A stretch of DNA of 64,000 nt from Isurus oxyrinchus (taxonomy: Eukaryota), in assembly GCA_026770705.1 (NCBI GenBank), contig JANJGN010000052.1, positions 620,001 to 684,000 on the forward strand, read 5' to 3'. Under the pieces are notes generated by a model. The model saw nothing but the letters and a program-made list of their open reading frames with translations, ran no database searches and had not been told where the DNA came from. The translations under genes and the position numbers were made by a program. This document shows positions 1-28,679 of the stretch, one piece after another (position 1 is the stretch's first letter; each line of letters starts with the position of its first letter).

Positions 1-470
1 CTTCATGGGAAGTCCTGACTTAGATCAGCAAAAGACACAAAATTTCAGGGCATTGTTATCCGTGTCCTAGCATCGGGATAGACCTCAACCCCCCGTTTTT
101 ATCCCTGATTCTCTCTTCAGCCGATCGCTTCCCTGTCACTCACTGACCAACACTGACTCCCAGTACAGCAATGACTCAAATTTCAAATTCTCATCATCGA
201 TTTCTTACCACACCATCCCCCCTCTACACTCTCTATCTGTGTAACCTCCTCCAACCCTAAAACCCTCTGAGATCTCTGCTCTCCTCCAATTCTGCTGTCA
301 GACATGGAGTCAGTGAATATCAGTGAGCACAGGGGTGATGGGTGAATGGGATTTGGTGTGTGTTTGTACACTGGCTCACTGCTGAATCGTTTCCCAATCA
401 CAGCTCAATAAGAATGATCTTTTACAAAGACTATTAACCATAAATCTGTCCAAGCTGACGATGTTATTAC

Positions 471-510
471 CTTGGAGAAGTGACAGGAGGAAGTAAGATT
501 TCCCGATCAT
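471..510 (-). CDS. Leader (signal peptide) exon of a Siglec-like gene continuing off the left edge (gene 0): MIGKSYFLLSLLQ
   Basis: acaATG start, 13 codons + 1 nt, CAAG|gtaata donor (phase 1), upstream polypyrimidine+cag acceptor; same exon found in 5 copies. Confidence 0.8.
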
Positions 511-960
511 TGTCCACTCCCAGATATTTCATTAGCTTCTGACTCTCAATCTCTGAAAGAGAAAGGAGTTAATGAGACCTCACCTCTTGTCCGACAGCTC
601 TCAAGAGATCAGAACTGCTTTTGGACAATGTCTTGACAGACTAATTTAATTCTCTGTGGGATGATAGGTACTCTGCAGAGAGTTACAAGGCTTTAAGAAA
701 GAAAAACATTGAAGGATTTGCATTTCTATTGCACCTTTCACCACCTCAAGACTTCCCAAAGCTCATGTCTCTGCACTTCCCTCATCCCTTGAGCTAGAAA
801 GATGTTCTGTACAACAGACTTGAGCCTCACACCCTGATCTCAATAATCAGTAGAAATCTTTCAAATGCATGAATCATTGGAATCTGTCTTTATAAAGTCA
901 CAACATCAACAAAGGACGGTGTTGGTCATGGATGTGAATTCCAATCGTTCCGTTACTTAC

Positions 961-1100
961 CCAGGACCCGTCCGACTGCTCGTCTGGAGAGGAACTGCCC
1001 ACACGCTCTGCTTGAGCTGAATGACCTCTTCCTGTGCTGCTCCCTCTGTGTGTTTAATTAGAAAGGGTGGATGTGTCACTGTGAGACAAAATGTGGAAGT
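961..1100 (-). promoter_or_regulatory. Candidate promoter and non-coding exon 1 of gene 0
   Basis: TGG|gtaagtaa donor at 960 about 400 bp upstream of the leader exon; ETS-like site near 1088-1101; block repeated in front of the leaders. Confidence 0.5.
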
Positions 1101-1324
1101 GGGTAATCAGTGAGAAGATCGAGGATGTTTTGTGCTCTCAGCAAAACGTTTACCATCTGATGATCTGTCAGCTCATATATGGGCATCTATAGTCATGAAG
1201 CTTCTCCATTGGCTCCGTGGGATTAGACTCCTCCCCCTCACCTCGGAGGCTGAAACTCAGGCGATAAGAGTTCCCAATACAGGTCTCTGGCCTTATGATT
1301 CATTTCAACGATCCCTGTTATCAT

Positions 1325-2305
1325 TACGGAGGGAGTGCTGCACTGTCAGTGGGACAGTACTGTGGGAGTGCTGCACTGTGGGAGGGTCAGTACTGAGGGA
1401 GTGCTGCACTAGCAGAAGGTCAGTAATGTGGGGGTGCTGCAATATCAGAGGGTGAGCAATGTGGGAGTGCTGCATTGTCAGAGGTTCAGAAATGAGGGAG
1501 TGCTGCAATGTTGGAGGGACAGTAGTGAGGGAGTGCTGCACTGTCAGAGGGTCAGTAATGTGGGAGTGCTGCACTGTCAGAGGGTCAGTAATGAGGGAGT
1601 GCTGCACTATCAGATGGTCAGTAATGTGGGAGTGCTGAACAGTCAGCGTGTCTGTACTGAGTGAGTTCCACACAGTCGGAGGCTCAGTATTGAGGGGGTG
1701 CCGGACTGTGGGATGGTTAATACTGAGGTAGAGCGGAGTAAGAGCAGATATCCTTTCATGGCAAAGTTTAACTGGAATTTATTTAAACTGAGATTCTTGT
1801 ACTGTGTGTTATTGCAAAAGAAAGGATTTGAGGAACTAAGTCTTGTTCCCGTAAGCCTAAAAATAATTTTCACTGATTTCAATGATGTAGCAATGGAACC
1901 TCCCTCTTTGGGCACCAATCTTGATTGAAACAACTTGCGCAGCACAGTGGGAGTACTGATAGAGTGCTGCACTGTGGGAGGTTGAGTACTGAGGGAGTGC
2001 TGCACTGTCAGAGAGTCTGTACCGCGGGAGTGCTGAACTGTCGGAAGGTCAGTAGTGAGGGAGGGATACAGTGTCAGAGAATCAGTACTGAGGGAGTGCT
2101 GTACTGTGGGTGGGTGAGTACTGAGGGAGTGCTGCACTGTCAGATTGTCAGCCATGAGGGAATGCTGCACTGTCAGAAGGTTAGTGCTGACGGGGTGCTG
2201 CACTTGAAAAGGGTCAATAATGAGGTTGTGCAGCACTGTTAGAGGGACAGTAATGAGGGAGCGCTGCACTGACGGAGGGTCAGCACTGAGGAAACGCTGC
2301 ACTGT
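1325..2305 (+). repeat. 33-bp minisatellite arrays (unit ~ACTGAGGGAGTGCTGCACTGTCAGAGGGTCAGT), interrupted at ~1735-1940
   Basis: Visible tandem units; spurious 11-aa periodic ORFs (EGVLHCQRVST / TVQHSLSTDP). Confidence 0.9.
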
Positions 2306-3029
2306 CAGTTCTGATTGTGGTCCGCAATGTCCTAAGTGCATTCTAGGCACTGCCCAAGATTCCGCCTGATGTCTGTGTAACAACAACATCATGTACAAGT
2401 CAAGAATAATTCTCACTGTGTCAGTGCAGCAAGACAGCTTTGGAATGGCACCACCACTGGCAGGAGTGTGCAACTACAATGTGACATGTTTACATTGGAA
2501 ATTTCTATTATAAAGATGGGCAATGGAATTCATATGATGGAGAAAATGTGACAACATGAAGTAATGTCTTTGAGCCAAGAATTTGGCTGCAAAATAAGAA
2601 TTTTAATCTATAAATATCTACAGAACAGGCTGAGCATTTTAATCACTTGAGTTAATCAATGTAATTTTATTCATAACCCAAATGCCTCCTACAATCTATC
2701 GCAGCATGAAAAAGGTGCAGTATTCAGAAAGCACATTCCAATCAGAGAACAGAGTTTAGCAACGTCACATTTCTGTTCATTCCTATTCGACCATGTTGGC
2801 TGCACACAGCCAGACAATGCCGTGGTTATGATGTGTCCACACAGCAGGACTGGGGAGCACCAGGTATAAGGAAAAGTTTCAGCTTGCTGAGGAGAAGAAG
2901 GAGAATCTCTCGTTGCAGGTTTCTCTCCGTACATTAAGAAGCAGGCATGCCTATGTTTCATTGCACTCTGTCTGCTGATGGGAGTCCGCTTGGAAATTGC
3001 TGTTTGTGCTGATGGAAAGAATAAGCTTT

Positions 3030-3625
3030 TCATAAATCGAGGGATTGAGAACAAACACAGGGAGGTTATGTTGAACATTTATAAAGCTCTGGTTAGGTGA
3101 CAACTAGAGTATTGTGTCCAGTTCTGGTCTCCTCACTTTGGGAAGGAAGTGAGCGTCCTTGAGAGGGTGGGGAGGAGATTGAGCAGAATGGGTCCAGGGA
3201 TGAGGGATTTTAGCTACAAGGTTGGGTTGGCGAAGCTGGGGTTGTTCTCCTTGGAGCAAAGGAGATTGAGGGGGGATCTGATCGAGGTGTACAAGATGAT
3301 GATGGGTTTAGATAACGGTAGACAAAGAGAAGCTGTTGCCATTAGCTGATGGTACAAGGACTGGGGGACACAGATTGAAGGTTTTGGGCAGAGGGGGGAT
3401 GTGAGGAGGAACCTTTTTACACAGCGAGTGGTAATGAGCTGGAACTCGCTGCCTACGAGGATGGTGGAAGCGGAGACGATGAACGATTTCAAAAGGAAAT
3501 TGGATGGACACTTGAGGGGAAATAAACTTGAAGAGATACAGGGATAGAGTGGGGGAATGGAACTGACTGGATTGCTCTACAGAGAGACAGCATGGAGTCG
3601 ATGGGCCAAATGCCGTTCTTCTGTT
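3030..3625 (+). mobile_element. CR1-type LINE 3' fragment (lies in the 3' UTR region of the activating gene)
   Basis: LGLFSLEQRRLRGDLIEVYKMM, typical of the CR1 ORF2 C-terminus, plus CR1 3' tail. Confidence 0.85.
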
Positions 3626-3654
3626 CCATGATGAGATTGTTGCTGTACAATGTT

Positions 3655-3794
3655 TCAAACAGTCTGTCGACTTCCTTTCACTGTTTGTTCCTCCCAGACA
3701 CAGACTCCAGCGATAGTGATAACCACAGCCACAAGGAATATCACAGCTCGTATTCCCAGGATCAGGATCACGTGCAGAATCTCTCCTCCACTGT
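3655..3794 (-). CDS. Transmembrane/short-tail terminal exon, activating type: (D)SGGEILHVILILGIRAVIFLVAVVITIAGVCVWEEQTVKGSRQTV*
   Basis: Polypyrimidine+tag acceptor at 3795-3797, phase 1 matches Ig exons, long hydrophobic run containing Arg (CGA 3750-3748), TGA at 3657-3655; copy at 39635. Confidence 0.85.
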
Positions 3795-5477
3795 CTAGAG
3801 AACACACAGAAAGAAATCATCACTGACTCTCCGCTTTCAATCTCTCACTCTGGCTGAACAATCAAGCTTCATATCACTGCAACATTTGCTGTAATATTGA
3901 CCCATCCACTGGGATTCAATGTGGAATGAATGTTTTCATTGTAAACACTCTAAGAGTGGACAATCGGAACTTTCCCCTTAGCGTGGAACATTGGTGAGAA
4001 TGGATCATTGTGCTGTTGGACTCCCTGTCCAATGTTTCTCTCCATTGCTGTGTACAGGATTGTGCTGTAGAAAATTCTGGAAACGTTTTGTGAAGGATGG
4101 AAATCCATCTCGGATGCGTGTGTGAATCGGGCAGGATCGAGATGGACTCCCCCATGGACTTACACCCCCCGCTTAATAAACAGTTCCAATCTTTACCCAG
4201 AGAGAGGGGAGAATGTGGAACTCACTCCCACTGGGAGTGGTTGAGGTGAACGGTATCGATGTATTTACGGGGCAGGAGGGTCAGTAACCAGAGGGACACA
4301 GATTGACGAACTGGAGGGGGAGATGAGGAGAATTTGTTTTGACAGAGCGAGTTGTTGTGATCTGGAAGATTCTGCCTGAAAGGGTGGTGGAAGCAGATTC
4401 AATAGGAACTTTCAAAAGGGGAATTGGATAAACACTTGAAGGAGGGAGATGGGGGCAAAGTGGAGTGGTGGTTAGTGGATCTGATTGGATAGAACATTGA
4501 AAGACCTGGCACAGGCACAATGGGCTGAATGGCTTCCTCCTGTGCTGTATCATTCTCCACTTCCATGATCTCTCCCCCAGTCAGTAACCACTCCAGATCC
4601 CTCTTGAAGGCAACAGAGCAACAGCAACCACCACACCCACGGACAGCACATTCCCGAGGATCACTGCTCTCTGGGAAAAGATGAACTCCCCAACATCCAG
4701 CCTATTCCTGCTTCCCAGAGAGTGTAAACCCTTCAGGGAGGCACTGAGGAAGTTTTCAATAAAATGACATCAAATCTACCGTTTGAGAAATAATTTAATT
4801 CCGATGAACTCACAGCTTGTGAGGCAAACTGGGAAGTGGATTTGCTTGAAAAGCTGAGAGATGCAAGGGTTAAGTTCTACTGTGCACCACTGGTGGTACA
4901 GTGTAACTACAGCGTGACGTTTACATAGGCAATCCCTATTATAAACAAGGACATTGGACATCAGGTGAAATACGGGCACTGGAAAAGTGAGAACATGATG
5001 TAAGCTTTTCACCAACAGGAATTCCCTTCCTAAACCTCTCCACCTCTCTCTTACTCTCAGATACTCAAACAAAATTTCACACAGATTCACGTAAGGAGGA
5101 GTTGGGACAATTGACTGGTCAAAGGGTTAGGTTTCAGGAAGCTTCTTAAAGGAGGATAGAGAGTTGGAGAGACAGAGAGTATCTGTGAGTGTCTCTATGC
5201 ATCTGAGTGTCTGTAATAGACTTTGCAATTTCCATATTCTTCCATAAACATGAAAGGGAACAGAAATCTCAGAATCCAGGTCAACTCTCCGGTGCAGCAC
5301 TGAGGGAGGTCAGGTAACCCACTGGGGAGTATTGTGCTAGTGTGTTTGTTGGTGTCTTTGTGTGTGCTCATATACGAGGGATTGTGTATCTGCAGGTGTC
5401 TATTTAGGTCTGTATATTTGTCTGTGTTTGTGTCATGTTTCAATCTGAGACAGATGATGAAATCTGTGTGCACTCAC

Positions 5478-5630
5478 ATTCCACAGTGATGGTTATGAAC
5501 CCCTCCACTGCTCCATGTTCATTCTCTGCCAAACACTGATAGTCTCCAGTGTCCCTGGATGTAACGTGAGGAATCACCAACCACAGCTCATTGTTGGAAC
5601 TTGTTCTGTTCATTGTGATATTCAGATGTC
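5478..5630 (-). pseudogene. 3' remnant of second C2-set exon of gene A (5' half and acceptor replaced by ~180 bp of unrelated sequence)
   Basis: Matches the 3' half of the intact exon 21279-21560 (NNELWLVIPHVTSRDTGDYQC...TITVE|gtgagt); match breaks at 5630 and resumes in the intron at ~5810. Confidence 0.8.
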
Positions 5631-5953: not shown

Positions 5954-6250
5954 CTTGTACAGTTAGTACGAGGGTCCGCTCCGATGAAACAGATGGATAT
6001 CTCACTCTGCAGCTGAGAGTGTGTCCGTGGTGTTTGAGTGATGGGATCAGGGTCAGAACAGAAGTATAGGTCAGAGTGACACCATGCTGAGTTACAGTGT
6101 TTGAGACTGATCCACGTACGTCAGTGGGAGTGTCCCAGGTTAAGACAGGTGCTGCTGTTCCATTGCACGTTGTGTTGAAGGTGCAGCTTACATCCACACG
6201 CTTTCCTGCAATAATTTCAGCAGGGAATATCGTGGGTTTATCTGTGAATT
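5954..6250 (-). CDS. Siglec-type C2-set Ig exon (domain 2), gene A
   Basis: 297 nt, phase 1/1, tag acceptor and G|gtaagt donor; SCTFNTTC (C-x5-C as in Siglec domain 2), LTW, HHGHTLSCRV. Confidence 0.9.
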
Positions 6251-6978: not shown

Positions 6979-7347
6979 CAGAAATGTGAAGCTGGGTTGC
7001 AGGATAGTAGCTGTAACTATTACTGTTGTCAAATTCTATTCTGAAAAAATAAGGTCCTGCATCTTCCCGTCTGATGTTGTTTATAATCAGGGAACAGTCG
7101 CCATCTTTCAGGTCTCCAGACAGCCGGGTCCAATGGTGGAACCGTGGTAACTCGTGACTGTGATCCTTGGAGTGAAAGGCAATGGGAGCCCAGGGAATCT
7201 GTTCCTCATTATTAAACCAGACTCCACCTCGTGGTTGGTTTTCCAGACATGATGGATAACTGTAATGACATGGAATCTGTACACACGAACCTTCCTGAGC
7301 TGTCACCTCTCGTGGACTGTCACCTTTCCACTCTTGTGAGGGTTCAG
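6979..7347 (-). CDS. Siglec-type V-set Ig exon V1 (type B), gene A
   Basis: 369 nt open, cag/gt, phase 1/1; EGSCVQIPCHYSYP, GDLKDGDCSLII, DAGPYFFRIE with essential Arg. Confidence 0.9.
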
Positions 7348-10817: not shown

Positions 10818-11195
10818 CAGAAACCTGAAGCTGGGTTTCAGGGTAATAGTTATGGCTCGGACCATTGTCAAATTCTATTCTGAAAAAATAAGGTCCTTCA
10901 TCTTCCCGTCTGATGTTGTTTATAATCAGGGAACAGTCGCCATCTTTCAGGTCTCCAGACAGCCGGGTCCGATGGTGGAACCATGGTAACTCGTGACTGT
11001 GATCCTTGGAGTGAAAGGCTATAGACCATTTAGACCATTTGTTCTGTATGTACCTCCTCATATACCAGATTCCGACATGTGTTTTCTTTACCAAATGTGA
11101 TGAGTAACTGTAATGACATGGAATCTGTACACATGAACCTTCCTGCGCTGTCACCTCTCGGGGACTGTCACCTTTCCACTCTTGTGACAGTCCAA
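10818..11195 (-). CDS. Siglec-type V-set Ig exon V2 (type A), gene A
   Basis: 378 nt open, cag/gt, phase 1/1; GIWYMRRYIQNKWSKWSIAF; YFFRIE Arg present. Confidence 0.88.
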
Positions 11196-13899: not shown

Positions 13900-15080
13900 C
13901 AGAATGTCCACGAAATTCCCCAGTTTGAACTGGGATGTAGCTGACCGACTATCTGAATTCAGAATGTTTAAACAGCGTACAGAGCTCTGGTTTCCTGATT
14001 CAGGTGTGACTGAACCAGACGAGCCACCCATAAAAATTCACCTCGTGATTGGGAATGAAGGTCTACACAGGCTGAACACGTCAGGATTAACAGCAGAAGA
14101 GTGAAAGGATCCCCAATAGATATGGACGACTTTGGAAGACAGGTTCAGAATCAGGTGAAACTCCATATTCATCAACTAGAGTTTATGTCATTTCATCAGC
14201 CTACACAATCCATAGACCACTTTGTCAGCCAATGTAGAGAAAAGGGTACGCACTGTGATTTCAAACACAGAGCCTGCAGACAGAGTTGTTGAGTTGGTGA
14301 TCGCATCCACTCCCATGGAAGCCTTCCAGAAAGATCTGCTAGATAAGTCCAAAACCTATAGCATTGAAGAGCTACTCAAGGATGGACATAAATACGAAGT
14401 AATCCTCGCAGGTCAACGAAGCTTACAGGTCCTCAGTACAACATCAATTGTTGACACACTCACTAGAACATCCAAACCTAGTGAGACGTGTGGAAGGTGT
14501 GGCCTTCTGCAGGCACCAAGGAAATGCCCAGCTTTCCACCAATCCTGCAAGGCTTGTGGCAGAAAGGGCCATTGACAGCGGCAGGGCACGAGAGCAAAGG
14601 CTGATGCAGCTACAAAGAGCCGTGCGCTGATCCAAACAGACCCTACACAACTGGGAACCTTCAAGCAATAAGAATGACCATCCACTATCCCATCAGGAAC
14701 ATATACATGTGGTGACAGACAAACCAGGAAATGGCGATGATGTGCACGGTGAGACGAGGAGCGGTGATCGATATTCCACCTCTCACACATATCCTGACGT
14801 GGCTTGCCAATAAATTGTGGATTGTTGTCCTTAATGATCTCTCTCAGCACATCAAATAAACTGAAAATGTCCCATAGGGGTGGGATTTTCTGGCCCCACC
14901 CACTGCCAGGATTATCCAGTCTGGCCAAAAGCCAATGGATTTATGTTTGTCCCAGTTTCACATACTACCCCATCACCTCAATTCATGACATAACATTGAA
15001 ATATGCAGAAAGTTTCAACAATATTGGCAGTTTCAAAGGAGCTCCAACATTACACCTGCTGGACAATGCAAGTCTGTCAA
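13900..15080 (+). mobile_element. Degenerate Ty3/Gypsy gag-pol remnant
   Basis: gag-like LNWD...FRMFKQRTELWF and CGRCG...CPAFHQSCKACGRKGH zinc knuckles; stops and frameshifts. Confidence 0.75.
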
Positions 15081-16024
15081 TTGATCTAGTCCATTTAGCA
15101 CAACACAAATGCCAGCAGCTGCAAGAGGGAACGGTGAAAGCTTCTACGCTACGGAAACTGAGGAAGCATCATTGAAGGATCTCCTGATTCAACTTGATCT
15201 TATTGGGATGAGCAAGGCATCTCCCGGGGAGTCATTTTTAAAGGCAGGCAGGGCATCATACTGGAATCTTTGTGATCCGATATTCTTCGACAACTTGGCA
15301 GTGGGAAATAGTGGGGACAGCCTGTCAAGGTAAGAAAATGAGGGGCCCATTGGCAGGTGTCAGTACTGTCCACATGTGTGTCCATCTCAGGCTGTTGGCT
15401 GGCCGAGTGCTTACAAGGATTTGAGATCACCTACAACATTTTGACTGTGACTCTCAGCACTCCACTGTGCCTGCTCTTGGACAATGTCCTTTACAGTGCA
15501 TCGAAGGGAGGGCCTGCTGAACCTGCAATGTGAAAAACTGCCCAGGGATATGTCCAATCCAGCGGGACAATTCCAACCTGGCCAATCACCACCTTATTAA
15601 TTTACTCTTCATCATAAGCAAAGTGACAAAGGTGTAATGGACATTAAGAGGCATTGACTCAACAATAACCTGCTCATCCAGCATGGTGGTAGTGCCACAC
15701 AACACAATGGAGGGTATCCTCAGTGAAAGGACGGGACTTCATCTCCAAGGTTTCTGTTCAGGACCAGGGTCCTATGGAGTCACTACACACAAAGGCTCAG
15801 CGGTGAGGCCTAACCAAGGAGAAATCAGATCCATTCCCGCTCCTCAATCACCATACAGTCCTGTTGCATGGAGTCATCGGGCTGAATTTTCCCGTTGGCG
15901 AGCAGGGGGCAGGGCCTGCTCAGCGACACTATGATGATGCGGGATGACATCAGGAGGAACCCCCGACATCATCCTGCTCCATTTAAATATTCAGGCCCAC
16001 CCGCCCGACAGGCAGGAAATTCAG

Positions 16025-18820
16025 CCCATAGAGTCATAGATTCACAGGGGTCCACAGCACAGTAAAAGGCCCTTTGGCCCATCGAATCTGCGTCGGTCAA
16101 ACAAGTACCTAATTGTTCTAATCCCATTAATGCACTGGGCCCAAAGCCTTGTATGCGATGGCATCACAAGTGCACATCCAAATACTTCTTAAATGTTATG
16201 AGGGTTTCTGCCTCTCCCACCCTTTCAGGCAGTGAGTTCCAGATTCAATCTATGCAACATCCTGGTAAATCTCCTCTGCACCCTCTCTAGGGCAATCACA
16301 TCCTTCCTATAATGTGGGTTCCAGAACTGCACGCAATATTCTAGCTGTGGCCTAACCAGTGTTCTATACAGTTCCAGCATAACCTCCCTGCTCTTATATT
16401 CTATCTCTCGGCTAATAAAGGCAAGTATTCCATATGCCTTCTTAACCACCTTATCCACCTGTCCCACTACTTTAAGGGAACGGTGGACATGCACACCAAG
16501 GTCCCTCTGATCCTTGTTACTTTCCAGGGTCCTACCATTCATTGTCTATTCCTGTGCCTTGTTTATCCTGCCCAAGTGCATCACCTCACACTTATGCAGG
16601 TTAAATTCCATTTGGCACTGATCAGCCCATCTGACCAGCCCGTCTATATCCCCCTGTAATCTAAGGCTATCCTCTTCATTATTTACCACCCCATCAATTT
16701 CCATATCATCCGCGAAGTCACTGATCAACCTTCCTACATTCAAGTTTAGACCGTTTATATATACCACAAACAGCAAGGGACCCAACACCGATCCCTGTGG
16801 AACCCCACTGGACACAGGCATCCAGTCACAAAAACACCCGTCGACCATCACCCTCTACTTCCTGGCACTCAGCCAATTCTGGATCCAATTTGCCAAATTC
16901 CCTTGGATCCCATGTGCTCTTACTTTCGTTTACAGTCTCCCATGCTGGACCTTATCAAAAGCCTTGCTGATGTCCAAGTTGACTATGTCAAATTCATTGC
17001 CCTCATCTACACAATTGGTCACCTCTTCAAAAAATTCAATCAAACTGGTCAGACATGACCTCCCTTTAACAAAACCATGCTGACTGTCCTTGATTAATCC
17101 CTGCCTCTCCAAGTGTAGATTAATTCTGTCCCTCAGAATTGCTTTCAATAGTTTCCCCACCACTGAGGTTAGACTGACTGACCTGTTGTTCCCTGGTTTA
17201 TCCCTTCCTCCCTTCTTGAATAACGCTACCACATTGGCTGTCCTCCAGTCCTCTGGTACCTCTCCTCTGGCCAGAGATGTATTGAAAATTATTGCCAGCA
17301 CCCCTGCTATCTCCTCCTTTGCCTCACTCAACAGCCTGAGATACATTTCATCCGGGCCTGCAGATATATCTACGTTTGAGACTGCCAGACAACTTAGAAC
17401 CTCGTTCCTTTCTATTCTAATTTCTTTAACTATATCACAGTCCTTCTGCCTGATTTCCAAACCCACATTGCCCCTCTCACTTGTGAACACTGACACAAAG
17501 TGTTCATTTAGAACCCTACCTACATCTTCCGGTTCCACACACAAACTACCAATATGGTCCTTAATGGGCCTTACTCTTTCCCTAGTTATCCTCTTACTCT
17601 TAATGTACTTGTAAAATAACTTTGGATTTTCCTTCATTTTTCCTGCTAATGTTTCTTCATGGCCCCTTTTTGCTCTACTAATTTTCTTTTTAAGGTCCCC
17701 CCTACACATTCTATACTCTTCTAAGGCTTCCACTGTTTTGAGCCCTTGGTATCTGCCATAAGCCTCCCTTTTTCTCTTTATCCAATCCTGTAAATCTCTC
17801 GACATCCAGGATTCCCTGGATTTGTTGGTCCCACCCTTTGCCTTTACTGGAATATGTTGGCCCTGTACTCTCCCCACTTCCTTCCTGAATGAGTCCCATT
17901 GCTCTGACGCAGATTTCCCTAAAGGTAGCTGCTCCCAGTTCCACTCTGGCCAAATCATATTTGATCTTATTAAAATCAGCCTTCCACCAATTGAGAACTC
18001 AGATTTCTGGCCCATCCTTGTTCTTTTCCATAACAACCTAGAATCTAATGGAATGATGATCACTATCTGCACAATGCTCCCCCACTGATACGTCTACAAC
18101 TTGCCTGGTTACATTCCTTAAAATTTACTCCAGGACCGACCCCTCTCTTGTAGGATTTTCTATGTACTGGCTTAAAAATCTCTCCTGGATGCATTTTAAC
18201 AATTCTGCCCCCTCTAAAACTATCACACTATGACTAACCCAGTTATTGTTGGGGAAGGTGAAAAGCCCCACCATTACAACCCGATTATTTTTATACTTCT
18301 CTGAATTTTGCCTTTGTATCTGCACTTCTATTTCTCTGAGTGTCATTGGGCCTGTAGAACACTCCCAGCAAGCTGATTGTTCCTTATTTGTTTTTAGGTT
18401 CTACCCATATGGCTTCATTTGAGGAGCCCCCTAAGGTGTCTTCCCTCCTCACTGCAATAACTGATTCCTTGATCAATCTTGCAATACCCCCTCCTCTTTT
18501 ACCTCCTTCCCTGTCTTGCCAGAAGACCCTGTATCCTGTAATATTGAGCGGCCAATCCTGCCCCTCTCTAATCCATGTCTGTGACAGCAATGACATCATA
18601 CATCCATGTGTTATTTGTGACCTCAACTCATCTGCTTTATTCGTCAGACTCCTTGCATTAAAGTAAATATAATCCAACTTTGCCACGCTATCTTGTGCCT
18701 TAACTGGCCAATAATTTCTCTGCCTTCCAGGTTCACTTGCTCTCTCTTCTAATTTTGGCTGTGCATCTCCCTCTGCTGAACCTCCTCTCTGGATCCCATC
18801 CCCTGCCATGTTAGTTTAAA
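16025..18820 (-). mobile_element. CR1 LINE ORF2 (endonuclease + RT), fragmented
   Basis: YFNARSL, VPEDWRTANV, QHGFVKGRSCLT, GVPQGSVLGP, FADD, LVRPQLEYC motifs. Confidence 0.95.
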
Positions 18821-21278
18821 GCCTCCCCAATTGCATCAAGGGTAAAATGCCAATTGAAACCAGGGACAACATCCAAGAATGACAATCCCACAGATCACTG
18901 TGAGCATTTAAAGACACCTCCAGACAAGGTTACCAACACAAGATCTGGGCGTAAGTGCAGATTACCTCTACTCTTTAGACACTCAAATATTCAACAAATC
19001 TATACTGTTATGTAATTGTCAATAAAATTGAAAATGATACCAGAAACCTCTTGTTCCCTGTCCTTCTCAAAGATCCATCCCTGCAGCTGGAGCCTTAAGA
19101 GTTATTGATGTGGGTCTTAATTTATCAGATTGTAGAATGATCGGGAACAAAAGGAAGCCATTTGGCCCATCGAGCCTGTGCTGGGCTTTTGAAAGATCTG
19201 TCCAATTAGTCCCACTCTCACCTCTGCTCTCTCCTCCACAGCCCTGCAAAATGTCACCTTCAAGTATTTATCCAGTTCCCCTTCTGAAAGTTCCTGTTGA
19301 ATCTGCTTCCACCGGCCTTTCAGGCAGTGAGTCAATGGTCTCTCTCTGAGCTGCAAAGTGCCCAGATTCTGTGAAATTTGAACTCTGCAGCAGGTCAGAG
19401 ACAATCATGATAACTCAGAATATTTGACAGTTTTACACACAGACAGCTTTGCCTTCCTTCTCTCTTTCAGTTATCTTGCTCCCTTATTGAAGTATCTAGC
19501 ATGGTGAGAATGGACAGGAAGTGTGACACTGAACAGCCTGTCTATTCTAGGAGCTGCTGTGTTGTCTTCATGGGCAATTTTGAATAAAGGCAGCAAAGGA
19601 CACAAATTTCAGGTCATTGCTATCGGAGACCTCACATCAGGATAGACTTCATCCCCCAGTTTTTATCCCTGATTTTCTATTCAGCTGATCACTCCCCTGT
19701 CACTGGCTGAACTACACTAACTCTCAGTCCAGCAATGACTCAAATTTCAAATTCTCATCATTGATTTCTTACCCCACCATCCCCCCTCTACACTCTCTAT
19801 CACTGTAACCTCCTCCAACCCTAAAAACCTCTGAGATCTCTGCTCTCCTCCAATTCTGCTGTCAGACAGGAGGTCAGTGTGTATCAGTAAGCACAGGGGT
19901 GATGGGTGAATGGGACTTGGTGTGAGTTTGTACACTGGCTCACTGGCTCAATCGGGCAGGATTGAGATGGACTCCCCCACGGACTTACACCCCCCGCTTA
20001 CTAAACAGTTCCAATCTTTACCCAGAGAGAGGGGAGAATGTGGAACTCGCTCCCACAGGGAGTGGTTGAGGTGAACAGTATCGATGTATTTAAGGGGCAT
20101 GAGGGTCGGTAACCAGAGGGACACAGATTGACGAACTGGATGGGGAATTTGTTTTGACAGAGCGAGTTGTTGTGATCTGGAAGGTGCTGCCTGAAATGGC
20201 AGTGGAAGCAGATTCAATAGGAACTTTCAAAAGGGAAATTGGATAAACACTTGAAGGAGGAAGATGGGGGTAAAGTGGAGTGGTGCTTAGTGGATCTGAT
20301 TGGATAGAACATTGAAAGACCTGGCACAGGCACAATGGGCTGAATGGCCTCCTCCTGTGCTGTATCATTCTCCGCTTCCATGATCTCTCCCCCAGTCAGT
20401 AACCACTCCAGATCCCTCTTGAAGGTGACAGAGAATCAGCAACCACCACACCCACTGACAGCACATTCCCGAGGATCACTACTCTCTGGGAAAAGATGAA
20501 CTCCCCAACATCCAACCTATTCCTGCTTCCCAGAGAGTGTAAACCCTTCAGGGAGGCACTGAGGAAGTTTTCAATAAAATGACATCAAATCCACCGTTTG
20601 AGAAACAATTGAATTCCGAAGAACTCACAGCTTGTGTAGCAAACTGGGAAGTAGAGTTGCTGGGAAAGCTGGGAAACACAAGGATTAAGGGCTACAATGC
20701 CACCACTGGTGAGAGGCTGTAACTACAGCGTGACGTTTACATAGGCAGTCATCATTATAAACAGGGGCTTTGGACATACTGGGAATTATGTGCACGGAAA
20801 TAGTGAGAACATTATGTAAGCTTTTCACCAGCAGGAATTCTCTTCCTAAACCTCTCCAACTCTCTCTTACTCTCAGATACACAAAGAAAATCACACAGAA
20901 TCAGATAAGGAGGAGTTGGGTTGGTGATTCGTCAAAGGGTTAGGTTTCAGGAAGCTTCTTAAAGGGAGAGAGAGAGTTGGAGACGCAGAGAGTATCTGTG
21001 AGAGCCTCTAAGCATCTGAGTGTCTGTAATAGTAATTTCCATATTCTTCCATAAATATGAATGGGAACACAAATCCCAGAATTCAGGCTAACTCTCCAGT
21101 GCAGTAGTGAGGGAGGTCAGGTAACCCATGAGGGAGTGAGTGTTAGTGTTTGTGTGTGAGTGTGTCTTTGTGTGTGGTCATATATGTGTGTCTGCACGTG
21201 TCTATTTAGGTGTGTATGTTCGATGGTGTTTGTGTAGTGTTCGAATCTGAGAGAGATGTTGAAGTCTGTGTAACTCAC

Positions 21279-21560
21279 GTTCCACAGTGATGGTTATGAA
21301 CCCCTCCACTGCTCCATGTTCATTCTCTGCCACACACTGATAGTCTCCAGTGTCCCTGGATGTAACGTGAGGAATCACCAACCACAGCTCATTGTTGGAA
21401 CTTGTTCTGTTCATTGGGACATTAAGATGTCGCCACGTCAGGTTAGAAGCTGGGAAGCTCTCGACAGAGCAGATTATCACTGCAGAATTCCCCTCAATTA
21501 TATTGATCGATGAAGCGTTAATCATATCAAGAGAAGTAATTGAGAGATTCTGTGGTGCGT
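21279..21560 (-). CDS. Second C2-set Ig exon, intact, gene B
   Basis: 282 nt, phase 1/1, cag/gt; APQNLSI...ICSVESFPASNLTW...DTGDYQCVAENEHG. Confidence 0.88.
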
Positions 21561-21696
21561 CTGAAAACAAATACAGATCAGTTAACTTACACTGACTGTG
21601 AAGCACTTTGAAAGACACTGAGAATGTGAAAGGTGTGATGTCAATGTACGTTCTTTCACCACATAGCCCGTAATCCAGGCAGACACTTCAGTTCAG

Positions 21697-22045
21697 TATT
21701 GAGGGCGTGCTGCACTGTCAGAGGGTCAGTACTGAGGGAGTGCTGCACTGTCAGAGAGTCAGTACTGAGGGAGTGCTGCACTGCCAGAGGTTCAGTACTG
21801 AGGGAGTGCTGCACTGTCAGAGGGTCAGTCCTCAGAGGGTGCAGTCAGTGCTGCACTGTAGGAGGGACAGTACTGTGGGAGCACTGCAGTGCAGGAGGGT
21901 TACTGCTGAGATAAAACTGCACAGTCAGAGCGTCAGTTCTGATTGACCAGTGCAATGTTGGAGGAGCACTACTGAGGGATCATTACACTATTAGAGAGAC
22001 AGTAATGAGGGAGTGCTGCACTGTAGAAGGGTCAGTGCTGAGGAG
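21697..22045 (+). repeat. 33-bp minisatellite array
   Basis: Same unit as 1325-2305. Confidence 0.85.
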
Positions 22046-22304
22046 GCAAACATGCTGTTATGTGTGTACTATAGGCCTCCTGTGATAATGTGGAGTGCCA
22101 GGTACTTTTAAGAGAATACAAGTGGATAAACCATGTGACAGTACTGACCAATCACTGGACAGTGTGGGCCACTGGTTAACTGTAAGTCCAGAGCTGGAGG
22201 TGGTTGTGGGAGCAGGCAAGGATTTAGTGCTCTGCCCTCTGTTACAATAAATAATCAGCTTGTTCTAATGTCGGTCTCTCTTGGTTATTGATAGCGAGCA
22301 TCAG

Positions 22305-22520
22305 CTAAGAATAACTCAACAGGTCTGGCAGCATCGGGGGAGAAGAAAAGAGTTGATGTTTCGAGTCCTCATGACCCTTCGACAGAACTGAGGTCATGAG
22401 GACTCGAACCGTCAACACTTTTCTTCTCCGCCGATGCTGCCAGACCTGCTGAGTTTTTCCAGGTAATTCTGTTTTTGTTTTGGATTTCCAGCATCCGCAG
22501 TTTTTTTGTTTTTATCAACT
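22305..22520. mobile_element. Penelope-like terminal fragment in inverted (hairpin) arrangement
   Basis: CTCAGCAGGTCTGGCAGCATC...GTTTCGAGTC-like arm and its reverse complement; same family as 33290, 35141, 36805. Confidence 0.6.
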
Positions 22521-22559
22521 AACAAGTGTATATGAAGGAATGCAATTCGAGTTTACTCA

Positions 22560-24330
22560 ACCAGTGAACTCATAGACTCAAGATATAAAACCAACAAACA
22601 GTCAGGGAGAGATGGACAATCCAACATGTGATCACATTTCAGAGATGTGTAAGAATAATAAAGCAGTAATACTCAGGGATTTTAACTACCCAAATATTAA
22701 CTGGGACAGCTTTAGTGAGCAAGGTAGGGAGGGAGAAAAATTCTGAAGTTGCATCCAGGAGAAGATTTTTAGTCTGTGCATAGAAAGCTCAACAAGGGAG
22801 GGGACAGTTCTGGACCTAATATATGGAAAAGCGCCGGGGAAGTTGGAAAGCGTATCAGTAGGGGAGATGGTGACTGTAACTCAATTGGATTTAGGACAGT
22901 TATGGAGAAGGATAAGTTTGTGCTGGGAATAAAAATTCTAAACTGGGGAAAGGCTAATTTTACTAAGATGAGATATGATTTGGCCCAAGTGGACTGAGAG
23001 AAGCTCTTTGCAGATAAAACTGTGTCAGAGCAGTGGGAGGCATTCAAGGAGGGAATAGCGAGAGTACAGAGCAGATATCTTCCTGTAAAGACAAAGAGGG
23101 AGACCAAGTCTGGAGAACCCTGGAAGACAAGGAACATAAAGGTTAGGACTGAGAAAAAAAAGAAGCTTATGGCAGATACTGAGGGCTCAATACAGCAGAG
23201 TCCCTAGAGGAGTACAAATAGTGCAGAGGGGAACTGAAAAAGGACATGAGGAAAGATAAGAGAGTGCATGAGAAAGCACTGGTGGGTAGAATAAAGCAAA
23301 ACCCAGAGGGGTTTTTTAAATATGTAAAAAGCAGCAGAATAACTCGGGAAAGAGTGGGGCCGATTAGGGGCCATAGAGGTGATGTGTGTGTGGACCTGGA
23401 AGACGTGGGTACAGTCCTCAATGAATACTTTGCATCTGTCTTCACAATGGAAAAGGATGATGCAGGTATAACATCAGGGTGGAGGACTGTGAAATATGAG
23501 ATGAAATTAACACAGAGAGAGGAGGTACTAGTGGGTTTAGTGGCCTGAAAAGTGGATAAATCCACAAGCCCAGATGAGATGAATCCAAAGCTGTTGAGGG
23601 AGGAAAGGGAAGAGATATCAGGGGCCCTGGCAGTAATTTTCAAATCCTCTCTGGCCACAGGTGAGGTGCCAGAGGACTGGAGGATGGCTAATGTTGTCCC
23701 ATTATTAAAAAAGGGAGGAAGGGATAGATCAGGAAATTACAGGCCAGTCAGTCTAACCTCGGTGGTGGGGAAGTTACTAGTAAGAATTCTGAAGGACAGA
23801 ATGAATCTGCACTGGGAGAGACAAGGATTAATCTGGGATATTCAGTTGGATTTGTTAAGGGAAGGTCATGTTTGACAAACCTGATCAAATCTTTTGAGGA
23901 GGTAACCAGGAGTGTTGATGAGAGTAATGCCTTTGTTGTGGTCGACATGGGCTGAGGAAGGCTTTTGATAAGGTGCCTCTTGGCAGAGAGGCCAAGAAAG
24001 TAAGAGCCCATGGGATCCAAGGCAAAGTGGCACGTTGGATCCAATATTGGCTGAGGCAGGAAGCAGAGGGTGATGGTGGAGGGATGTTTCTGTGACTGGA
24101 TGTCTGTTTCCAGTGGGGTTCCACAGGGCTCAGTGCTGGGGCACTTGCTGTTTGTGGTGTATATAAATGAATTGGACTTATATAAAGGAGGAATGATCAA
24201 GACGCAAATGGAATTCAACCTGGAAATATGTGAGGTGATGCACTTGGGGAGGGAGTTGCTGACCAGCATGGACATGATGGGCTAAATGGCCTCCTTCTGT
24301 CTATGTGTCTATGAGTCTATGAGTCCATGA
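22560..24330 (+). mobile_element. CR1 LINE ORF2 remnant in the C2-C2 intron of gene B
   Basis: LNWGKANF, GEVPEDWRMANV, NYRPVSLTSVVGK, SGVPQGSVLG; (CTATGAGT)-like tail. Confidence 0.92.
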
Positions 24331-24496
24331 TGCACTGTCGGAGAGTCAGTAGTAAGGATGTACTGCCTGTCAGGGCTCACTTTTTACCAGTTAAACACCA
24401 ATGGTTTGTTGGTAAACAAAGTGCAGTATGTGGGAGCTTGCTGTGCACATTTGATACTATTCCAGCTAATGTAGAAAGAAGGGTGTTTGTACTTAG

Positions 24497-24793
24497 ATAG
24501 CACAGTCAGTACGAGGGTCCGCTCCGATGAAACAGATGGATATCTCACTCTGCAGCTGAGAGTGTGTCCGTGGTGTTTGAGTGATGGGATCAGGGTCAGA
24601 ACAGAAGTATAGGTCAGAGTGACACCATGCTGAGTTACAGTGTTTGAGACTGATCCAGGTACGTCAGTGGGAGTGTCCCAGGTTAAGACAGGTGCTGCTG
24701 TTCCATTGCACGTTGTGTTGAAGGTGCAGCTTACATCCACATGCTTTCCTGCAATAATTTCAGCAGGGAATATCGTGGGTTTATCTGTGAAAT
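24497..24793 (-). CDS. C2-set Ig exon (domain 2), gene B; donor mutated GT>CT, frame reads on to a stop at 24384
   Basis: 297 nt open, near-identical to 5954-6250; ends T|ctaagt where paralogues have |gtaagt. Confidence 0.82.
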
Positions 24794-25737
24794 CTAACAG
24801 ACAGAGAATGGATCCTTTTAGAGAAATATAACGTGAAGCATCAGTTCAACTAGAAACCACAGTCCCACAAGAGAAAGCACTTTTACAAGGATGATATCAG
24901 AACTGAGAGGTTACAATGATCATTTTAGAATTGTCTATTTTTACACTTGTTGAATCTCTGTCACTCAGATTAATACACTCTCACTCAGTGACCCTTGATT
25001 TGACCAGACTGGGTGAGGGTGGAGGAACAGCTCACAGCTCGGGGAGAACAGACTCAGCATTTGGAAAAGGATATAGAGACACTGGAGAGGGTGGTAAAAA
25101 GCTTCACAAGGATGATCTCAGCAATGTGAGGCTTTACCTATCAGGAGAGGATGTACAGGCTGGGTCTCTGTTCTCTTGAACAGAGAAGGTTGAAGGGTGA
25201 CCTCATTTGACCTTTGAAGTAGTGAAAGGTTTTGATCGAGTAGACATGGAGAGAATGTTTCCACTCCTCACAATGAACAAAACCAGAGGCTGACAATATA
25301 AGATCGTCACTAATAAATCCAATGGGGAATTCAGGAGAAACTTCTTTACCCAGAGAGTGGGGAGAATGTGTGGTTCAAGAATCACTTCATTGGCTGTGAA
25401 TCGATTTAGGATCGTCCTGAGGTGGTGAAAGGCGCTATAGGAATGCAACTCATTCTGTTGTCAATTTGTGGGAATTTAAAACAGGATTAGACAGCTTGAT
25501 AAGAGTGGATAACCTGATAACATTGATGGACACACTCAATCTATTTAATCATTGATATTAAAGTGAGTATTAGAGGTTGCTTTAGGACTGAACTGGAAGC
25601 TATCACCAGGTTATTGAGAATCAGACAGTGTGTTATAATAAGCTGTGTTTTGTGTTAATATGTAAACGTCACAGATTGTGTTATTTCCCATTGAGTGTTG
25701 AATGTGAATTGTTGAGTAATTATAACACAGCACTTAC

Positions 25738-26106
25738 CAGAAACGTGAAGCTGGGTTACAGGGTAATAGTTATGGCTCGGACCATTGTCAAATTCTATCT
25801 TGAAAAAATAAGGTCCTGCATCTTCCCGTCTGATGTTGTTTATAATCAGGGAACAGTCGCCATCTTTCAGGTCTCCAGACAGCCGGGTCCGATGGTGGAA
25901 CCGTGGTAACTCGTGACTGTGATCCTTGGAGTGAAAGGCAATGGGAGCCCAGGGAATCTGTTTCTCATTATTAAACCAGACTCCACCTCGCGGTTGGTTT
26001 TCCAAATGTGATGGATAACTGTAATGACATGGAATCTTTACACACGAACCTTCCTGCGCTGTCACCTCTCGTGGAGTGTCACCTTTCCACTCTTGTGACA
26101 GTCCAA
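25738..26106 (-). CDS. Siglec-type V-set exon V3 (type B), gene B; essential Arg replaced by Lys
   Basis: 369 nt open, cag/gt; YFFKIEF (AAG at 25801-25799). Confidence 0.88.
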
Positions 26107-27028: not shown

Positions 27029-27068
27029 CTTGGAGAAGTGACAGGAGGAAGTAAGATTTCCCGATCAT
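27029..27068 (-). CDS. Leader exon of gene B (MIGKSYFLLSLLQ)
   Basis: acgATG, 40 nt, G|gtaata donor; joins V3 as ...LLQ-VGLS-QEWK, a plausible signal peptide. Confidence 0.82.
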
Positions 27069-27652: not shown

Positions 27653-27879
27653 CAGATCAAAGTGACAGAGCAGCTGATGTTTAGAGTTTTTTGAAGCTGT
27701 TAACCCTTTGCGTTCTGGACTTGTGATGATATTTCTGCTCAAAAGTGGAAAGTCATTGACCAGGAATTTCTCCTGTGGGTCACTGGGTTTCGAACCCTCT
27801 CTCGCTCTCTGAGTGGATGGTCACCTGTTCGAGATTCATTTGGCAAAATTCAGGCTGGCAAACCAGATCAGCACTCAGT

Positions 27880-28552
27880 GTCAGGACTGAGAGTCCTGCA
27901 CAATCGGAGGGTCAGTACTGAGAGAGAGCTGCACTGTTGGAGGGTGAGTATTGAGGGAGTGCTGCATAGTCAGAGGGTCAGTACTGAGGGAGTGCTGCAA
28001 GGTCAGAGGGTCAGTGCTAAGAGAGAGCTGCATTGTCAGAGGGTCAGTACAGAGGGACTGCTGCACAATCGGAGCGTCAGTACTGAGGGAGTGCTGCACT
28101 GTCAGAGGGTCAGTACTGAGGGAGTACTGCACTGTTGGAGGGTCAGTACTGAGGGAGTGTTGCACTGTGAGAGGGTCAGTACAGAGGTAGAGCTGCACTG
28201 TCAGAGGGTCAGTACTGAGGGAGTGCTGCACTGTCAGAGGGTCAGTACTGAGACAGAGCTGCACTGTCAGATGGGCAGTACTGAGGGAGTGTTGCACTGT
28301 GGGAGGGTCAGTACTGAGAAGTGCTGCACAGTCGGAGGGTCAGTACTGAGGGAGTGCTGCACAATCGGAGGGTCAGTACTGAGGGAGTGCTGCACTTTCG
28401 GAGGGTCAGTACTGAGGGAATGCTGCACTGTTGGAGGGTCAGTACCGAGGGAATGCTGCACCGTCGGAGTGTCAGTACTGAGGGAGTGCTGCACTGCTGG
28501 AGGGTCAGTACCGAGGGACTGCTGCACTGTCGCAGGCTCAGTACCGAGGGAA
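27880..28552 (+). repeat. 33-bp minisatellite array (~20 units), inner end of left arm
   Basis: Visible tandem units. Confidence 0.92.
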
Positions 28553-28679
28553 TGTAAACCGAACCCATTGGTCAACTAAAATAGTGACAAGGGTTGAATA
28601 AACTGGTGATGAGGTGAAAAACAAGGAAGAAAAAGCAAGGAATGAAAGCAAGCAAATTGAAATCTGGCCGTGCCTCGCA

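What the first reader, a model, noticed from the sequence alone, without database searches (positions are those of the whole stretch)
19935..19965. A ~3.7-kb deletion fuses gene B to gene A
Left of 19950 matches 1-385; right of it matches 4123 onward. The reference copy has TGAATCG at both 383-389 and 4123-4129, a microhomology. The lost interval contains the TM(Arg) exon of the upstream gene plus the promoter, exon 1 and leader of the downstream gene. So B lacks a membrane anchor and A lacks a start, but together they form one in-phase unit: L-V3-(C2)-C2-V2-V1-C2-TM(Arg), with three selectable V exons under promoter B. This is reminiscent of the human SIGLEC14/5 fusion allele.
Basis: partly seen in the sequence, partly recalled or inferred. 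Interest (0 to 1): 0.8.

Follow-up and report, generated by a model that had tools for sequence, protein, structure and literature searches.

The report
Deletion joining two shark Siglec genes
In a shark cluster of Siglec-type immune receptor genes, about 3.6 kb has been lost between two neighbouring genes, removing the membrane anchor of one and the promoter and start of the next. This leaves one unit that could be read through, but nothing yet shows that it is used.

Summary
Left of 19948-19955 the sequence matches 26-389, and the inverted unit at 44190-42879. Right of it the sequence matches 4125 onward, and 39302-37807. The two undeleted units carry TGAATCG(G) at both breakpoints.

The missing 3.6-3.7 kb holds a TM(Arg)+stop exon, a minisatellite, a promoter region and a leader exon. 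Both breakpoints lie in introns. Upstream gene B therefore has no anchor exon, and downstream gene A has no leader. All exons are phase 1, so read-through would stay in frame.

The loss is derived. It was mediated by microhomology, not by homologous recombination, so the SIGLEC14/5 analogy is loose.

I found two extra lesions in B. Its first C2 exon has lost its splice donor, and its V domain has Lys at the sialic-acid-binding Arg.

Expression is untested. The only runs available were short contigs, and none shown bridges 19950. The RNA contigs that lie on B's C2 exon come from paralogs.

I read this as a real, probably young structural variant in a fast-evolving gene family. The odds of a working fusion receptor are roughly 30%.

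The scan has noted many Siglec clusters and multi-V genes elsewhere in this genome, but the notes I retrieved record no such deletion.

The parts
19948..19955 (.). Deletion junction. The microhomology block TCAATCGG is shared by both parental sequences (TGAATCGG in undeleted units). Just to its left lie one extra G and a G>C change, which create the direct repeat TGGCTCA(C)TGGCTCA(A).
18643..19947 (-). Left flank: the remnant of gene A's intron 1. In undeleted units it starts 81 bp downstream of the leader's splice donor.
   Evidence: (93.0% to 44190-42879; 89-91% to 26-389)
19956..21278 (-). Right flank: the remnant of gene B's last intron. In undeleted units it ends about 330 bp before the TM(Arg) exon.
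   Evidence: (92.7% to 39302-37807; 89.3% to 4125-5630)
27029..27068 (-). Gene B leader exon (MIGKSYFLLSLLQ, donor G|GTAATA, phase 1). The 44-nt probe covering this exon plus the first 4 intron bases matches the leader at 510-471 at 44 of 44.
25738..26106 (-). Gene B V-set exon 'V3' (369 nt, intact reading frame and splice sites). The canonical sialic-acid-binding Arg is replaced by Lys (FFKIE, codon 25801-25799).
24497..24793 (-). Gene B C2-set exon 'C2a' (domain 2 type). The acceptor is intact. The donor is destroyed: GTGCTAT|CTAAGT instead of GTGCAAG|GTAAGT.
21279..21560 (-). Gene B C2/I-set exon 'C2b' (282 nt, intact, donor AAC|GTGAGT, phase 1). It is the last B exon before the junction.
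10818..11195 (-). Gene A V-set exon 'V2' (378 nt, intact, Arg kept: FFRIE). It is the first exon after the junction.
6979..7347 (-). Gene A V-set exon 'V1' (369 nt, intact, Arg kept).
5954..6250 (-). Gene A C2-set exon 'C2a' (297 nt, intact acceptor and donor).
5478..5630 (-). Gene A half C2b exon. Only the 3' half is present and it has no acceptor, so it is probably skipped. The inverted unit D shares the same truncation.
3655..3794 (-). Gene A terminal exon: a TM segment with Arg, a short tail and a stop (…ILHVILILGIRAVIFLVAVVITIAGVCVWEEQTVKGSRQTV*).
390..4129 (-). Undeleted reference interval 1. It holds the TM(Arg) exon, a 33-bp minisatellite (1321-2308), the upstream region and the next gene's leader (510-471). 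This is the stretch missing at 19950.
39299..42878 (+). Undeleted reference interval 2 (inverted unit). It holds D's TM(Arg) exon at 39635-39774, a minisatellite at 41120-41525 and gene C's leader at 42759-42798.

Best explanation
The window holds an array of Siglec-type receptor genes of a shark. Each repeating unit reads leader, intron 1, one or two V exons, C2a, C2b, a TM(Arg)+stop exon, then an intergenic stretch with a 33-bp minisatellite, then the next leader.

Between two same-strand neighbours, B upstream and A downstream on the minus strand, about 3.6-3.7 kb was lost in one event. That event joined two unrelated intronic points sharing 7-8 nt (TGAATCGG). This signature fits microhomology-mediated end joining or replication slippage, not unequal homologous crossing-over.

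The lost piece carried B's only membrane-anchor/stop exon, B's 3' end, and A's promoter region and leader exon. What remains is a hybrid 10.1-kb intron with B's C2b donor (21279) at one end and A's V2 acceptor (11195) at the other. A's exons can now be expressed only from B's promoter, and B's exons can reach a membrane anchor only through A.

Shown here: the junction, what was lost, that the loss is derived, and that splice sites and phase are compatible. Inferred: the repair mechanism and the present function.

My commitment on function is as follows. It is a real and probably young deletion. Slightly more likely than not (about 55%) the hybrid is a decaying relic or yields only aberrant read-through RNA, because B already has a donorless C2a exon and a Lys at the binding Arg of V3. 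About 30% of the time B's promoter and leader would rescue A's intact exons as a membrane-anchored activating receptor. That product would be L-V3-C2b-V2-V1-C2a-TM(Arg), or L spliced directly to V2 or V1.
For: - Junction and homology jumps against two independent undeleted units.
- Left-flank sequence continues past the breakpoint in four other copies.
- The interval holds a TM(Arg)+stop exon and a leader.
- Only two TM(Arg) exons exist in the window (3794-3655 and 39635-39774), none of them for B.
- Five leaders exist, none between 19950 and 11195.
- Homology to other repeat copies in the window starts only at 20139 or beyond, so the breakpoint is not at a mobile-element edge.
- Both flanks are unique sequence, 6-11% from every other copy, so the join is not a collapse of identical repeats.
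- B's flank is nearest to D (K2P 0.064). A's flank is nearest to C (0.094) and far from B's own intron 1 (about 0.2).
- Exon lengths of 369, 297, 282, 378, 369 and 297 nt, all phase 1 with canonical sites except B's C2a donor.
- The exons are of Siglec type.
Against: - No read or contig shown bridges 19950. All runs on offer were short Logan contigs of runs of roughly 0.1-5 billion letters, so the junction rests on the assembly alone.
- No B>A splice junction was seen. The spliced RNA contigs on B's C2b continue into a C2-like exon that is absent from the window.
- A's four exons are all intact, and A's C2a is only 1.0% diverged from C's against 4.9% in flanking non-coding sequence. This is compatible with A still being under selection, so the 'relic' leaning could be wrong.
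- Relationships among the units are mosaic. A and D share the half-C2b truncation although B's flank is closer to D, so gene conversion blurs the history.
Confidence: 0.6

Rival explanations
1. Working fusion receptor. B's promoter and leader drive a spliced in-frame mRNA that runs into A's exons and ends in A's TM(Arg) exon. The product is a multi-headed activating Siglec, or a promoter-swapped A.
For: - Same strand, with both breakpoints intronic; donor 21279 and acceptor 11195 are intact, and all exons are phase 1.
- A's V2, V1, C2a and TM exons and B's leader, V3 and C2b are all open with canonical sites.
- A's C2a is conserved against its paralog: 1.0% versus 4.9% in non-coding sequence.
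- An earlier scan note (s1-871168, not tested here) reports RNA with V exons of such genes spliced to one another.
Against: - No transcript evidence.
- B's C2a exon has no donor, so V3 would lose its partner domain 2.
- V3 has Lys at the essential Arg.
- The hybrid intron is 10 kb and holds a same-strand LINE insertion (15080-18642).
- A V-C2-V-V-C2 order is not a known Siglec layout.
Confidence: 0.3
2. Assembly artefact. The 3.6 kb exists in the animal but was dropped by the assembler or by a chimeric read.
For: The region is a dense array of 85-96% similar repeats with nearby N gaps (51540-52012), and no independent bridging read could be shown.
Against: - Repeat collapse joins sequences within long identical stretches. 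Here the two sides share only 7-8 nt, and each flank is unique, 6-11% from every other copy in the window.
- There are no Ns near the junction.
Confidence: 0.06
3. No loss at all. An internal tandem duplication of the exon block between intron 1 (point y) and the pre-TM intron (point x) of a single gene would create the same x|y junction. B+A would then always have been one gene.
For: The junction topology (x joined to y) is identical under both models, and genes with many repeated V exons exist in this genome (scan notes s1-871168 and s1-865389, not tested here).
Against: - The two blocks are not each other's closest relatives. B's flank groups with D and A's with C or unit 1, and B's own copy of the y region is the most distant (about 0.2).
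- B has one V and a 0.9-kb intron 1, whereas A has two V exons and a long intron 1 shared with C.
- The parallel pair D-C on the other strand has the full interval between them.
Confidence: 0.07

Closest known systems
Human SIGLEC14/5 fusion (SIGLEC14-null) allele
   Same: A deletion between adjacent, same-orientation paired Siglec genes puts the downstream gene's coding exons behind the upstream gene's promoter. One partner is an Arg-TM activating receptor (PMC4042635, PMC6288428).
   Different: - The human allele arose by recombination inside highly similar 5' regions and encodes a normal Siglec-5 protein. It is proven to be expressed and polymorphic.
- Here the breakpoints are intronic and unrelated apart from 7-8 nt.
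- The anchor lost is the upstream gene's, and the retained tail is the activating one.
- The predicted product is a chimera with extra domains.
- Expression and polymorphism are unknown.
Hybrid genes from deletions in other tandem families (KIR/LILR hybrids, haemoglobin Lepore); from my own knowledge, not tested here
   Same: The DNA between two tandem paralogs is lost, leaving one composite transcription unit.
   Different: Those cases arise by unequal homologous crossing-over at equivalent positions and keep the normal exon count. Here two non-equivalent introns are joined, so exons are added rather than exchanged.
Microhomology-mediated deletions (MMEJ, replication slippage or template switching); from my own knowledge
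   Same: Unrelated flanks, 7-8 nt of shared sequence at both breakpoints, and a small extra change next to the junction that creates a local direct repeat.
   Different: The repair pathway cannot be proven from one junction.
Multi-V 'many-headed' shark Siglec genes noted elsewhere in this scan (s1-871168, s1-865389, s1-868840)
   Same: One leader is followed by several intact V-set exons, all phase 1, ending in one C2 and a TM(Arg).
   Different: Those genes have V exons in an uninterrupted row. Here a stalk-type C2 exon and a donorless C2 exon sit between V3 and V2, and the layout came from a deletion between two genes.

Membership tests
[quoted passage not shown] | N-terminal V-set domain of Siglec type | tested here: met
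   V3, V2 and V1 hit Pfam V-set (E 1e-10 to 1e-12) and Ig_CD22. The best solved relatives are Siglec-5, -7, -8, CD33 and MAG. The nearest database proteins are shark 'Siglec 13/14' and 'CD33-like'.
[quoted passage not shown] | Conserved Arg on strand F (YFFR[IV]E) that binds the sialic acid carboxylate | tested here: met
   Met for V2 and V1 (FFRIE). Not met for B's V3, where FFKIE aligns with FFRVE of human Siglec-5.
[quoted passage not shown] | C2-set domain 2 directly after the V domain | tested here: met
   The C2a exons hit Pfam C2-set_2. In B this exon has lost its splice donor.
[quoted passage not shown] | Actual sialic acid binding | not testable with these tools
   Needs a glycan-binding assay.
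Activating (adaptor-coupled) immune receptor | Basic residue inside the TM helix and a short tail without signalling motifs | tested here: met
   The exon at 3794-3655 encodes ILHVILILGIRAVIFLVAVVITIAGVCVW followed by a 13-aa tail and a stop. Adaptor pairing was not tested.
SIGLEC14/5-type fusion allele | Deletion between adjacent same-strand paralogs that removes the downstream promoter | tested here: met
SIGLEC14/5-type fusion allele | Breakpoints within long, highly similar sequence (homologous recombination) | tested here: not met
   Only 7-8 nt are shared, and the flanks are otherwise unrelated.
SIGLEC14/5-type fusion allele | Product is a normal-architecture receptor, shown to be expressed | tested here: inconclusive
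   The RNA contigs lying on B's C2b derive from paralogs, and no B>A joint is listed. Only part of the output was shown, and the RNA run is small.
SIGLEC14/5-type fusion allele | Polymorphic in the population alongside the undeleted allele | not tested
   The single reads call gave only short contigs, which cannot tell alleles from paralogs.
Microhomology-mediated deletion | Non-homologous flanks with short identical sequence at both breakpoints, one copy retained | tested here: met
   TGAATCG(G) occurs at 383-389 and 4123-4129, and one copy (TCAATCGG) remains at 19948-19955.

The most novel reading that the evidence does not exclude
The deletion created, by natural exon shuffling through two introns, a new activating Siglec that is expressed from B's promoter. 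It would have a domain order not seen before (V-C2-V-V-C2-TM(Arg)), or would be a promoter-swapped A. It might segregate with the undeleted haplotype as a presence/absence polymorphism, making it a shark counterpart of the human SIGLEC14/5 situation with an independent origin and a different mechanism.
Probability: 0.15. Interest if true: 0.6.

Novelty: new member of a known kind. Interest (0 to 1): 0.33.

Why it matters
If the hybrid unit is expressed, it would be a caught-in-the-act example of how paired immune receptor families invent new domain combinations and swap promoters by small intronic deletions. It would also show that the gene-fusion route known from human SIGLEC14/5 is very old or recurrent. 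If it is not expressed, it is one more casualty of birth-and-death turnover in a very large shark Siglec family. In that case its main use is as an annotation warning: two 'partial' genes here are one deletion product.

Tried and rejected
1. Reads. The one run search offered only Logan contigs, plus one raw-read run of another organism. The one read-laying run (19000-24999; runs X2, X5, X6, X7) returned pieces of 80-390 bp, and none shown bridges 19950. It neither supports nor refutes the junction.
2. RNA. X6 holds spliced contigs. Its C2a>C2b joint carries the intact-donor letters (GTGCAAG|ACGCACC), which B lacks. The loose end after donor 21279 (ATGCACCACGGGAT, the start of another C2-like exon) is absent from the window even with 2 mismatches. 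These contigs therefore come from paralogs.
3. Word search with the V2 exon, hoping for transcript-derived fragments that show what is spliced upstream. It returned only three annotated proteins of other sharks (62-74% identity). Longer annotated models are outside that tool's length range.
4. Breakpoint at a mobile-element edge. Rejected, because homology to other repeat copies in the window begins only at 20139 or beyond.
5. Internal tandem duplication instead of deletion. Disfavoured by the distances.
6. A constraint test on A's exons. The A-C alignments are nearly free of indels even in introns, so intact frames say little.
7. The look-up of encoding contigs with the 54-aa ORF that spans the junction.
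8. Steps left out. The large representative-protein search was not used, because the family is not in doubt.
9. Restrictions.

Full report
WHAT IS THERE

The window is a dense cluster of Siglec-type receptor genes.
- The V exons hit Pfam V-set and Ig_CD22, and the C2 exons hit C2-set_2 or Ig_3/I-set.
- The best solved relatives of the V exon are human Siglec-5, -7, -8, CD33 and MAG.
- The nearest database proteins are annotated shark Siglecs: Carcharodon at 72-74% and Rhincodon at 62%. The source is therefore a shark of another species.
- Earlier notes of this scan record hundreds of Siglec observations in the same genome.

THE OBSERVATION

- 26-389 matches 19591-19954 at 89%, and 4125-5630 matches 19950-21431 at 89%.
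- A second, inverted undeleted unit shows the same jump: 18643-19955 matches 44190-42879 (93.0%), and 19952-21431 matches 39302-37807 (92.7%).
- The sequence left of the breakpoint runs on without a break in four other copies.

In the alignment of all seven flank copies:
- the left copies read ...CTCACTG-CTGAATCGGTTCCC...
- the right copies read ...GTGTGAATCGG|GCAGGAT...
- the junction copy reads ...CTCACTGGCTCAATCGG|GCAGGATT...

The switch therefore lies within 19948-19955. In unit 1, TGAATCG stands at 383-389 and at 4123-4129. Unit C's left side and unit 1's right side share 8 nt.

Next to the junction, the junction copy has one extra G and a G>C change. Together these create a small direct repeat (TGGCTCAC/TGGCTCAA).

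The missing stretch is 3,740 bp in unit 1 and about 3,580 bp in the inverted unit.

WHAT WAS LOST

On the minus strand the gene order is B (upstream), A, then a third gene whose leader is at 510-471. I read each exon with its splice sites.

Gene B:
- Leader, 27068-27029: MIGKSYFLLSLLQ, donor G|GTAATA.
- V3, 26106-25738: intact.
- C2a, 24793-24497: intact acceptor, donor destroyed.
- C2b, 21560-21279: intact.

Gene A:
- V2, 11195-10818.
- V1, 7347-6979.
- C2a, 6250-5954.
- A truncated half C2b, 5630-5478, with no acceptor.
- A terminal exon, 3794-3655, encoding a TM helix with an Arg, 13 tail residues and a stop.

In the undeleted units the right breakpoint lies about 330 bp upstream of the TM(Arg) exon, and the left breakpoint lies 81 bp downstream of the leader's donor. 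Both cuts are therefore intronic. The interval carried the upstream gene's anchor/stop exon and 3' end, a 33-bp minisatellite, the upstream region and the downstream gene's leader.

A scan for leader-like exons finds five: (-) 510-471 and 27068-27029, and (+) 34982-35021, 42759-42798 and 63648-63687. None lies between 19950 and 11195.

A scan for the TM(Arg) exon finds only 3794-3655 and 39635-39774.

All internal exons are multiples of three in phase 1, so any read-through stays in frame. That is trivially true of Ig-superfamily exons.

DELETION, DUPLICATION OR ARTEFACT?

Direction of the change. The interval contains functional exons. It is present between the parallel pair D-C on the other strand and between A and the next gene. 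The left flank continues in four copies. The junction is therefore the derived state.

Internal tandem duplication. Duplicating the exon block from intron 1 to the pre-TM intron would give the same junction without any loss. It predicts that the B block and the A block are sisters, and they are not.
- B's flank is closest to D (K2P 0.064, against 0.099 to A's own homologous stretch).
- A's flank is closest to C (0.094) and unit 1 (0.113).
- B's own intron 1 copy is the most distant (about 0.2).
- B also has one V and a 0.9-kb intron 1, whereas A shares two V exons and a long intron 1 with C.

I give this model about 7%.

Assembly error. Repeat collapse needs long identity. Here the two sides share 7-8 nt, and each flank is 6-11% from every other copy in the window. 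I give an artefact about 6%, but I could not obtain independent read support.

Mobile elements. The breakpoint is not at a mobile-element edge, because homology to other repeat copies begins only at 20139 or beyond.

Mechanism. Unrelated flanks, 7-8 nt of microhomology and a small local change at the joint fit microhomology-mediated end joining or replication slippage. They do not fit unequal homologous crossing-over. This step is an inference.

STATE OF THE TWO GENES

Gene A. Its four usable exons are open with canonical sites, and V2 and V1 keep the FFRIE arginine. I compared A with its closest paralog C over an ungapped 1,469-bp block:
- C2a differs at 1.0%;
- non-coding sequence differs at 4.9%;
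- V1 differs at 7.9%, with 17 non-synonymous against 6 synonymous codon differences.

This is the conserved-stalk, diversified-head pattern of paired receptors. It dates from the A-C split, not from the deletion. Indels are nearly absent even in introns, so intact frames say little.

Gene B. It has two further lesions.
- The C2a donor reads CT instead of GT, through three clustered changes (CAAGG>CTATC). The next GT is 4 nt on and would shift the frame, so this exon must be skipped.
- V3 carries Lys where human Siglec-5 has its essential Arg: FFKIE aligned to FFRVE.

If C2b's donor were not used, the frame runs 25 codons into the intron and then stops (ORF 21205-21687). That would give a possible soluble product.

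EXPRESSION

The single run search listed only Logan contigs of two coded organisms, plus one raw-read run of a third. The single read-laying run (19000-24999) returned pieces of 80-390 bp, and none shown bridges 19950.

One run (X6) is clearly RNA, since it holds spliced contigs. Its evidence does not concern B:
- Its C2a>C2b joint carries the intact-donor letters that B lacks.
- The sequence following donor 21279 is the start of another C2-like exon that is not in this window.
- It also shows C2b-to-C2b joints, as expected from genes with repeated stalk exons.

These RNAs come from paralogs. Whether B transcripts reach A therefore remains untested. An earlier scan follow-up (s1-871168, not checked here) reports that V exons of such shark genes are spliced to one another. 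That makes a multi-headed product conceivable.

COMPARISON WITH WHAT IS KNOWN

The human SIGLEC14/5 allele fuses two adjacent paired Siglec genes and puts SIGLEC5 coding sequence under the SIGLEC14 promoter (PMC4042635; listed as 'SIGLEC14-SIGLEC5 fusion (SIGLEC14 deletion)' in PMC6288428). The shark case shares the topology: an adjacent same-strand pair with the downstream promoter removed. It fails the defining mechanism, which is recombination in highly similar regions. It would also yield a chimera rather than a normal receptor, and its expression and polymorphism are unknown. It works like an interstitial fusion-by-deletion, which is a well-known class of structural variant. I found no paper on shark Siglec clusters in the held library.

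VERDICT

- The structural reading is correct.
- The functional reading is unproven and is weakened by B's extra lesions.
- This is most likely a genuine, fairly young microhomology-mediated deletion in a rapidly turning-over gene family.

I put about 55% on a relic or aberrant read-through, about 30% on a working fusion or promoter swap, and the remainder on an artefact or an internal duplication.

Interest is modest. The case would become notable only if cDNA shows the 21279>11195 or 27029>11195 junctions, or if the deletion segregates in the population.

LIMITS

- The N runs were not touched.

Noticed in passing
window 1321-2308, 27877-28555, 34250-34560, 41120-41525, 56035-56424; also 21680-22043: A 33-bp minisatellite (one frame reads LSTDPPTVQHS repeats) lies upstream of four of the five leader exons, at roughly 0.4-1.2 kb, as part of the repeating gene unit. 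No copy was seen near the leader at 63648. The copy at 56035-56424 lies far from any leader found. One further copy sits inside B's intron just upstream of the C2b exon. One copy lies in the deleted interval and could have favoured replication errors there.
   Followed up: partly
window 24495-24499 (-): B's C2a splice donor is destroyed by three clustered substitutions (CAAGG>CTATC), which looks like one complex mutational event. The exon's acceptor and reading frame are intact.
   Followed up: yes
window 25799-25801 (-): V3 of gene B has Lys (AAG) at the position of the essential sialic-acid-binding Arg. V2, V1 and both V exons of gene C keep Arg.
   Followed up: yes
window 5478-5630 and 37807-37976: Units A and D share the same truncation of the C2b exon (only the 3' half, with no acceptor), while B keeps the full exon plus about 3 kb more. 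Yet B's flank is closer in sequence to D's than A's is. These mosaic relationships point to gene conversion.
   Followed up: partly
window 390-4124 vs 39303-42878: The two undeleted copies of the interval (TM exon, intergenic stretch, leader) differ by only 4.7%. Their immediate flanks differ by 8.8-10.7%. This suggests homogenisation or constraint on the tail-plus-promoter module.
   Followed up: no
window 15080-18642: A 3.56-kb insertion carrying LINE reverse-transcriptase reading frames (e.g. 16933-18093, minus strand) sits in A's intron 1. It is absent from the homologous intron of gene C, where the flanks abut at 44187/44190. It lies on the same strand as the gene, inside the hybrid intron.
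   Followed up: partly
window 5929-7397 vs 49929-51397: Between paralogs A and C the V exon is more diverged (7.9%; 17 non-synonymous against 6 synonymous codon differences) than the intron (4.9%), while the C2a exon is almost identical (1.0%). The head has diversified and the stalk is conserved. A ends in TM(Arg), whereas C continues into a different 3' region beyond the N gaps.
   Followed up: partly
window 27068 (-) and 34982 (+): Genes B and D are head to head, with leaders 7.9 kb apart and retroelement gag/pol-like reading frames (28.6-31.2 kb) and satellites between them. The pairs B-A and D-C form roughly mirror-image arms, and only the B-A arm has lost the inter-gene interval.
   Followed up: partly
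run X6, on window 21279-21560: RNA contigs join the end of a C2b-like exon to the start of another C2b-like exon (21280 joined back to 21555/21560). This fits genes elsewhere with repeated stalk exons, as in the scan note on an 'accordion stalk' just beyond the window.
   Followed up: no
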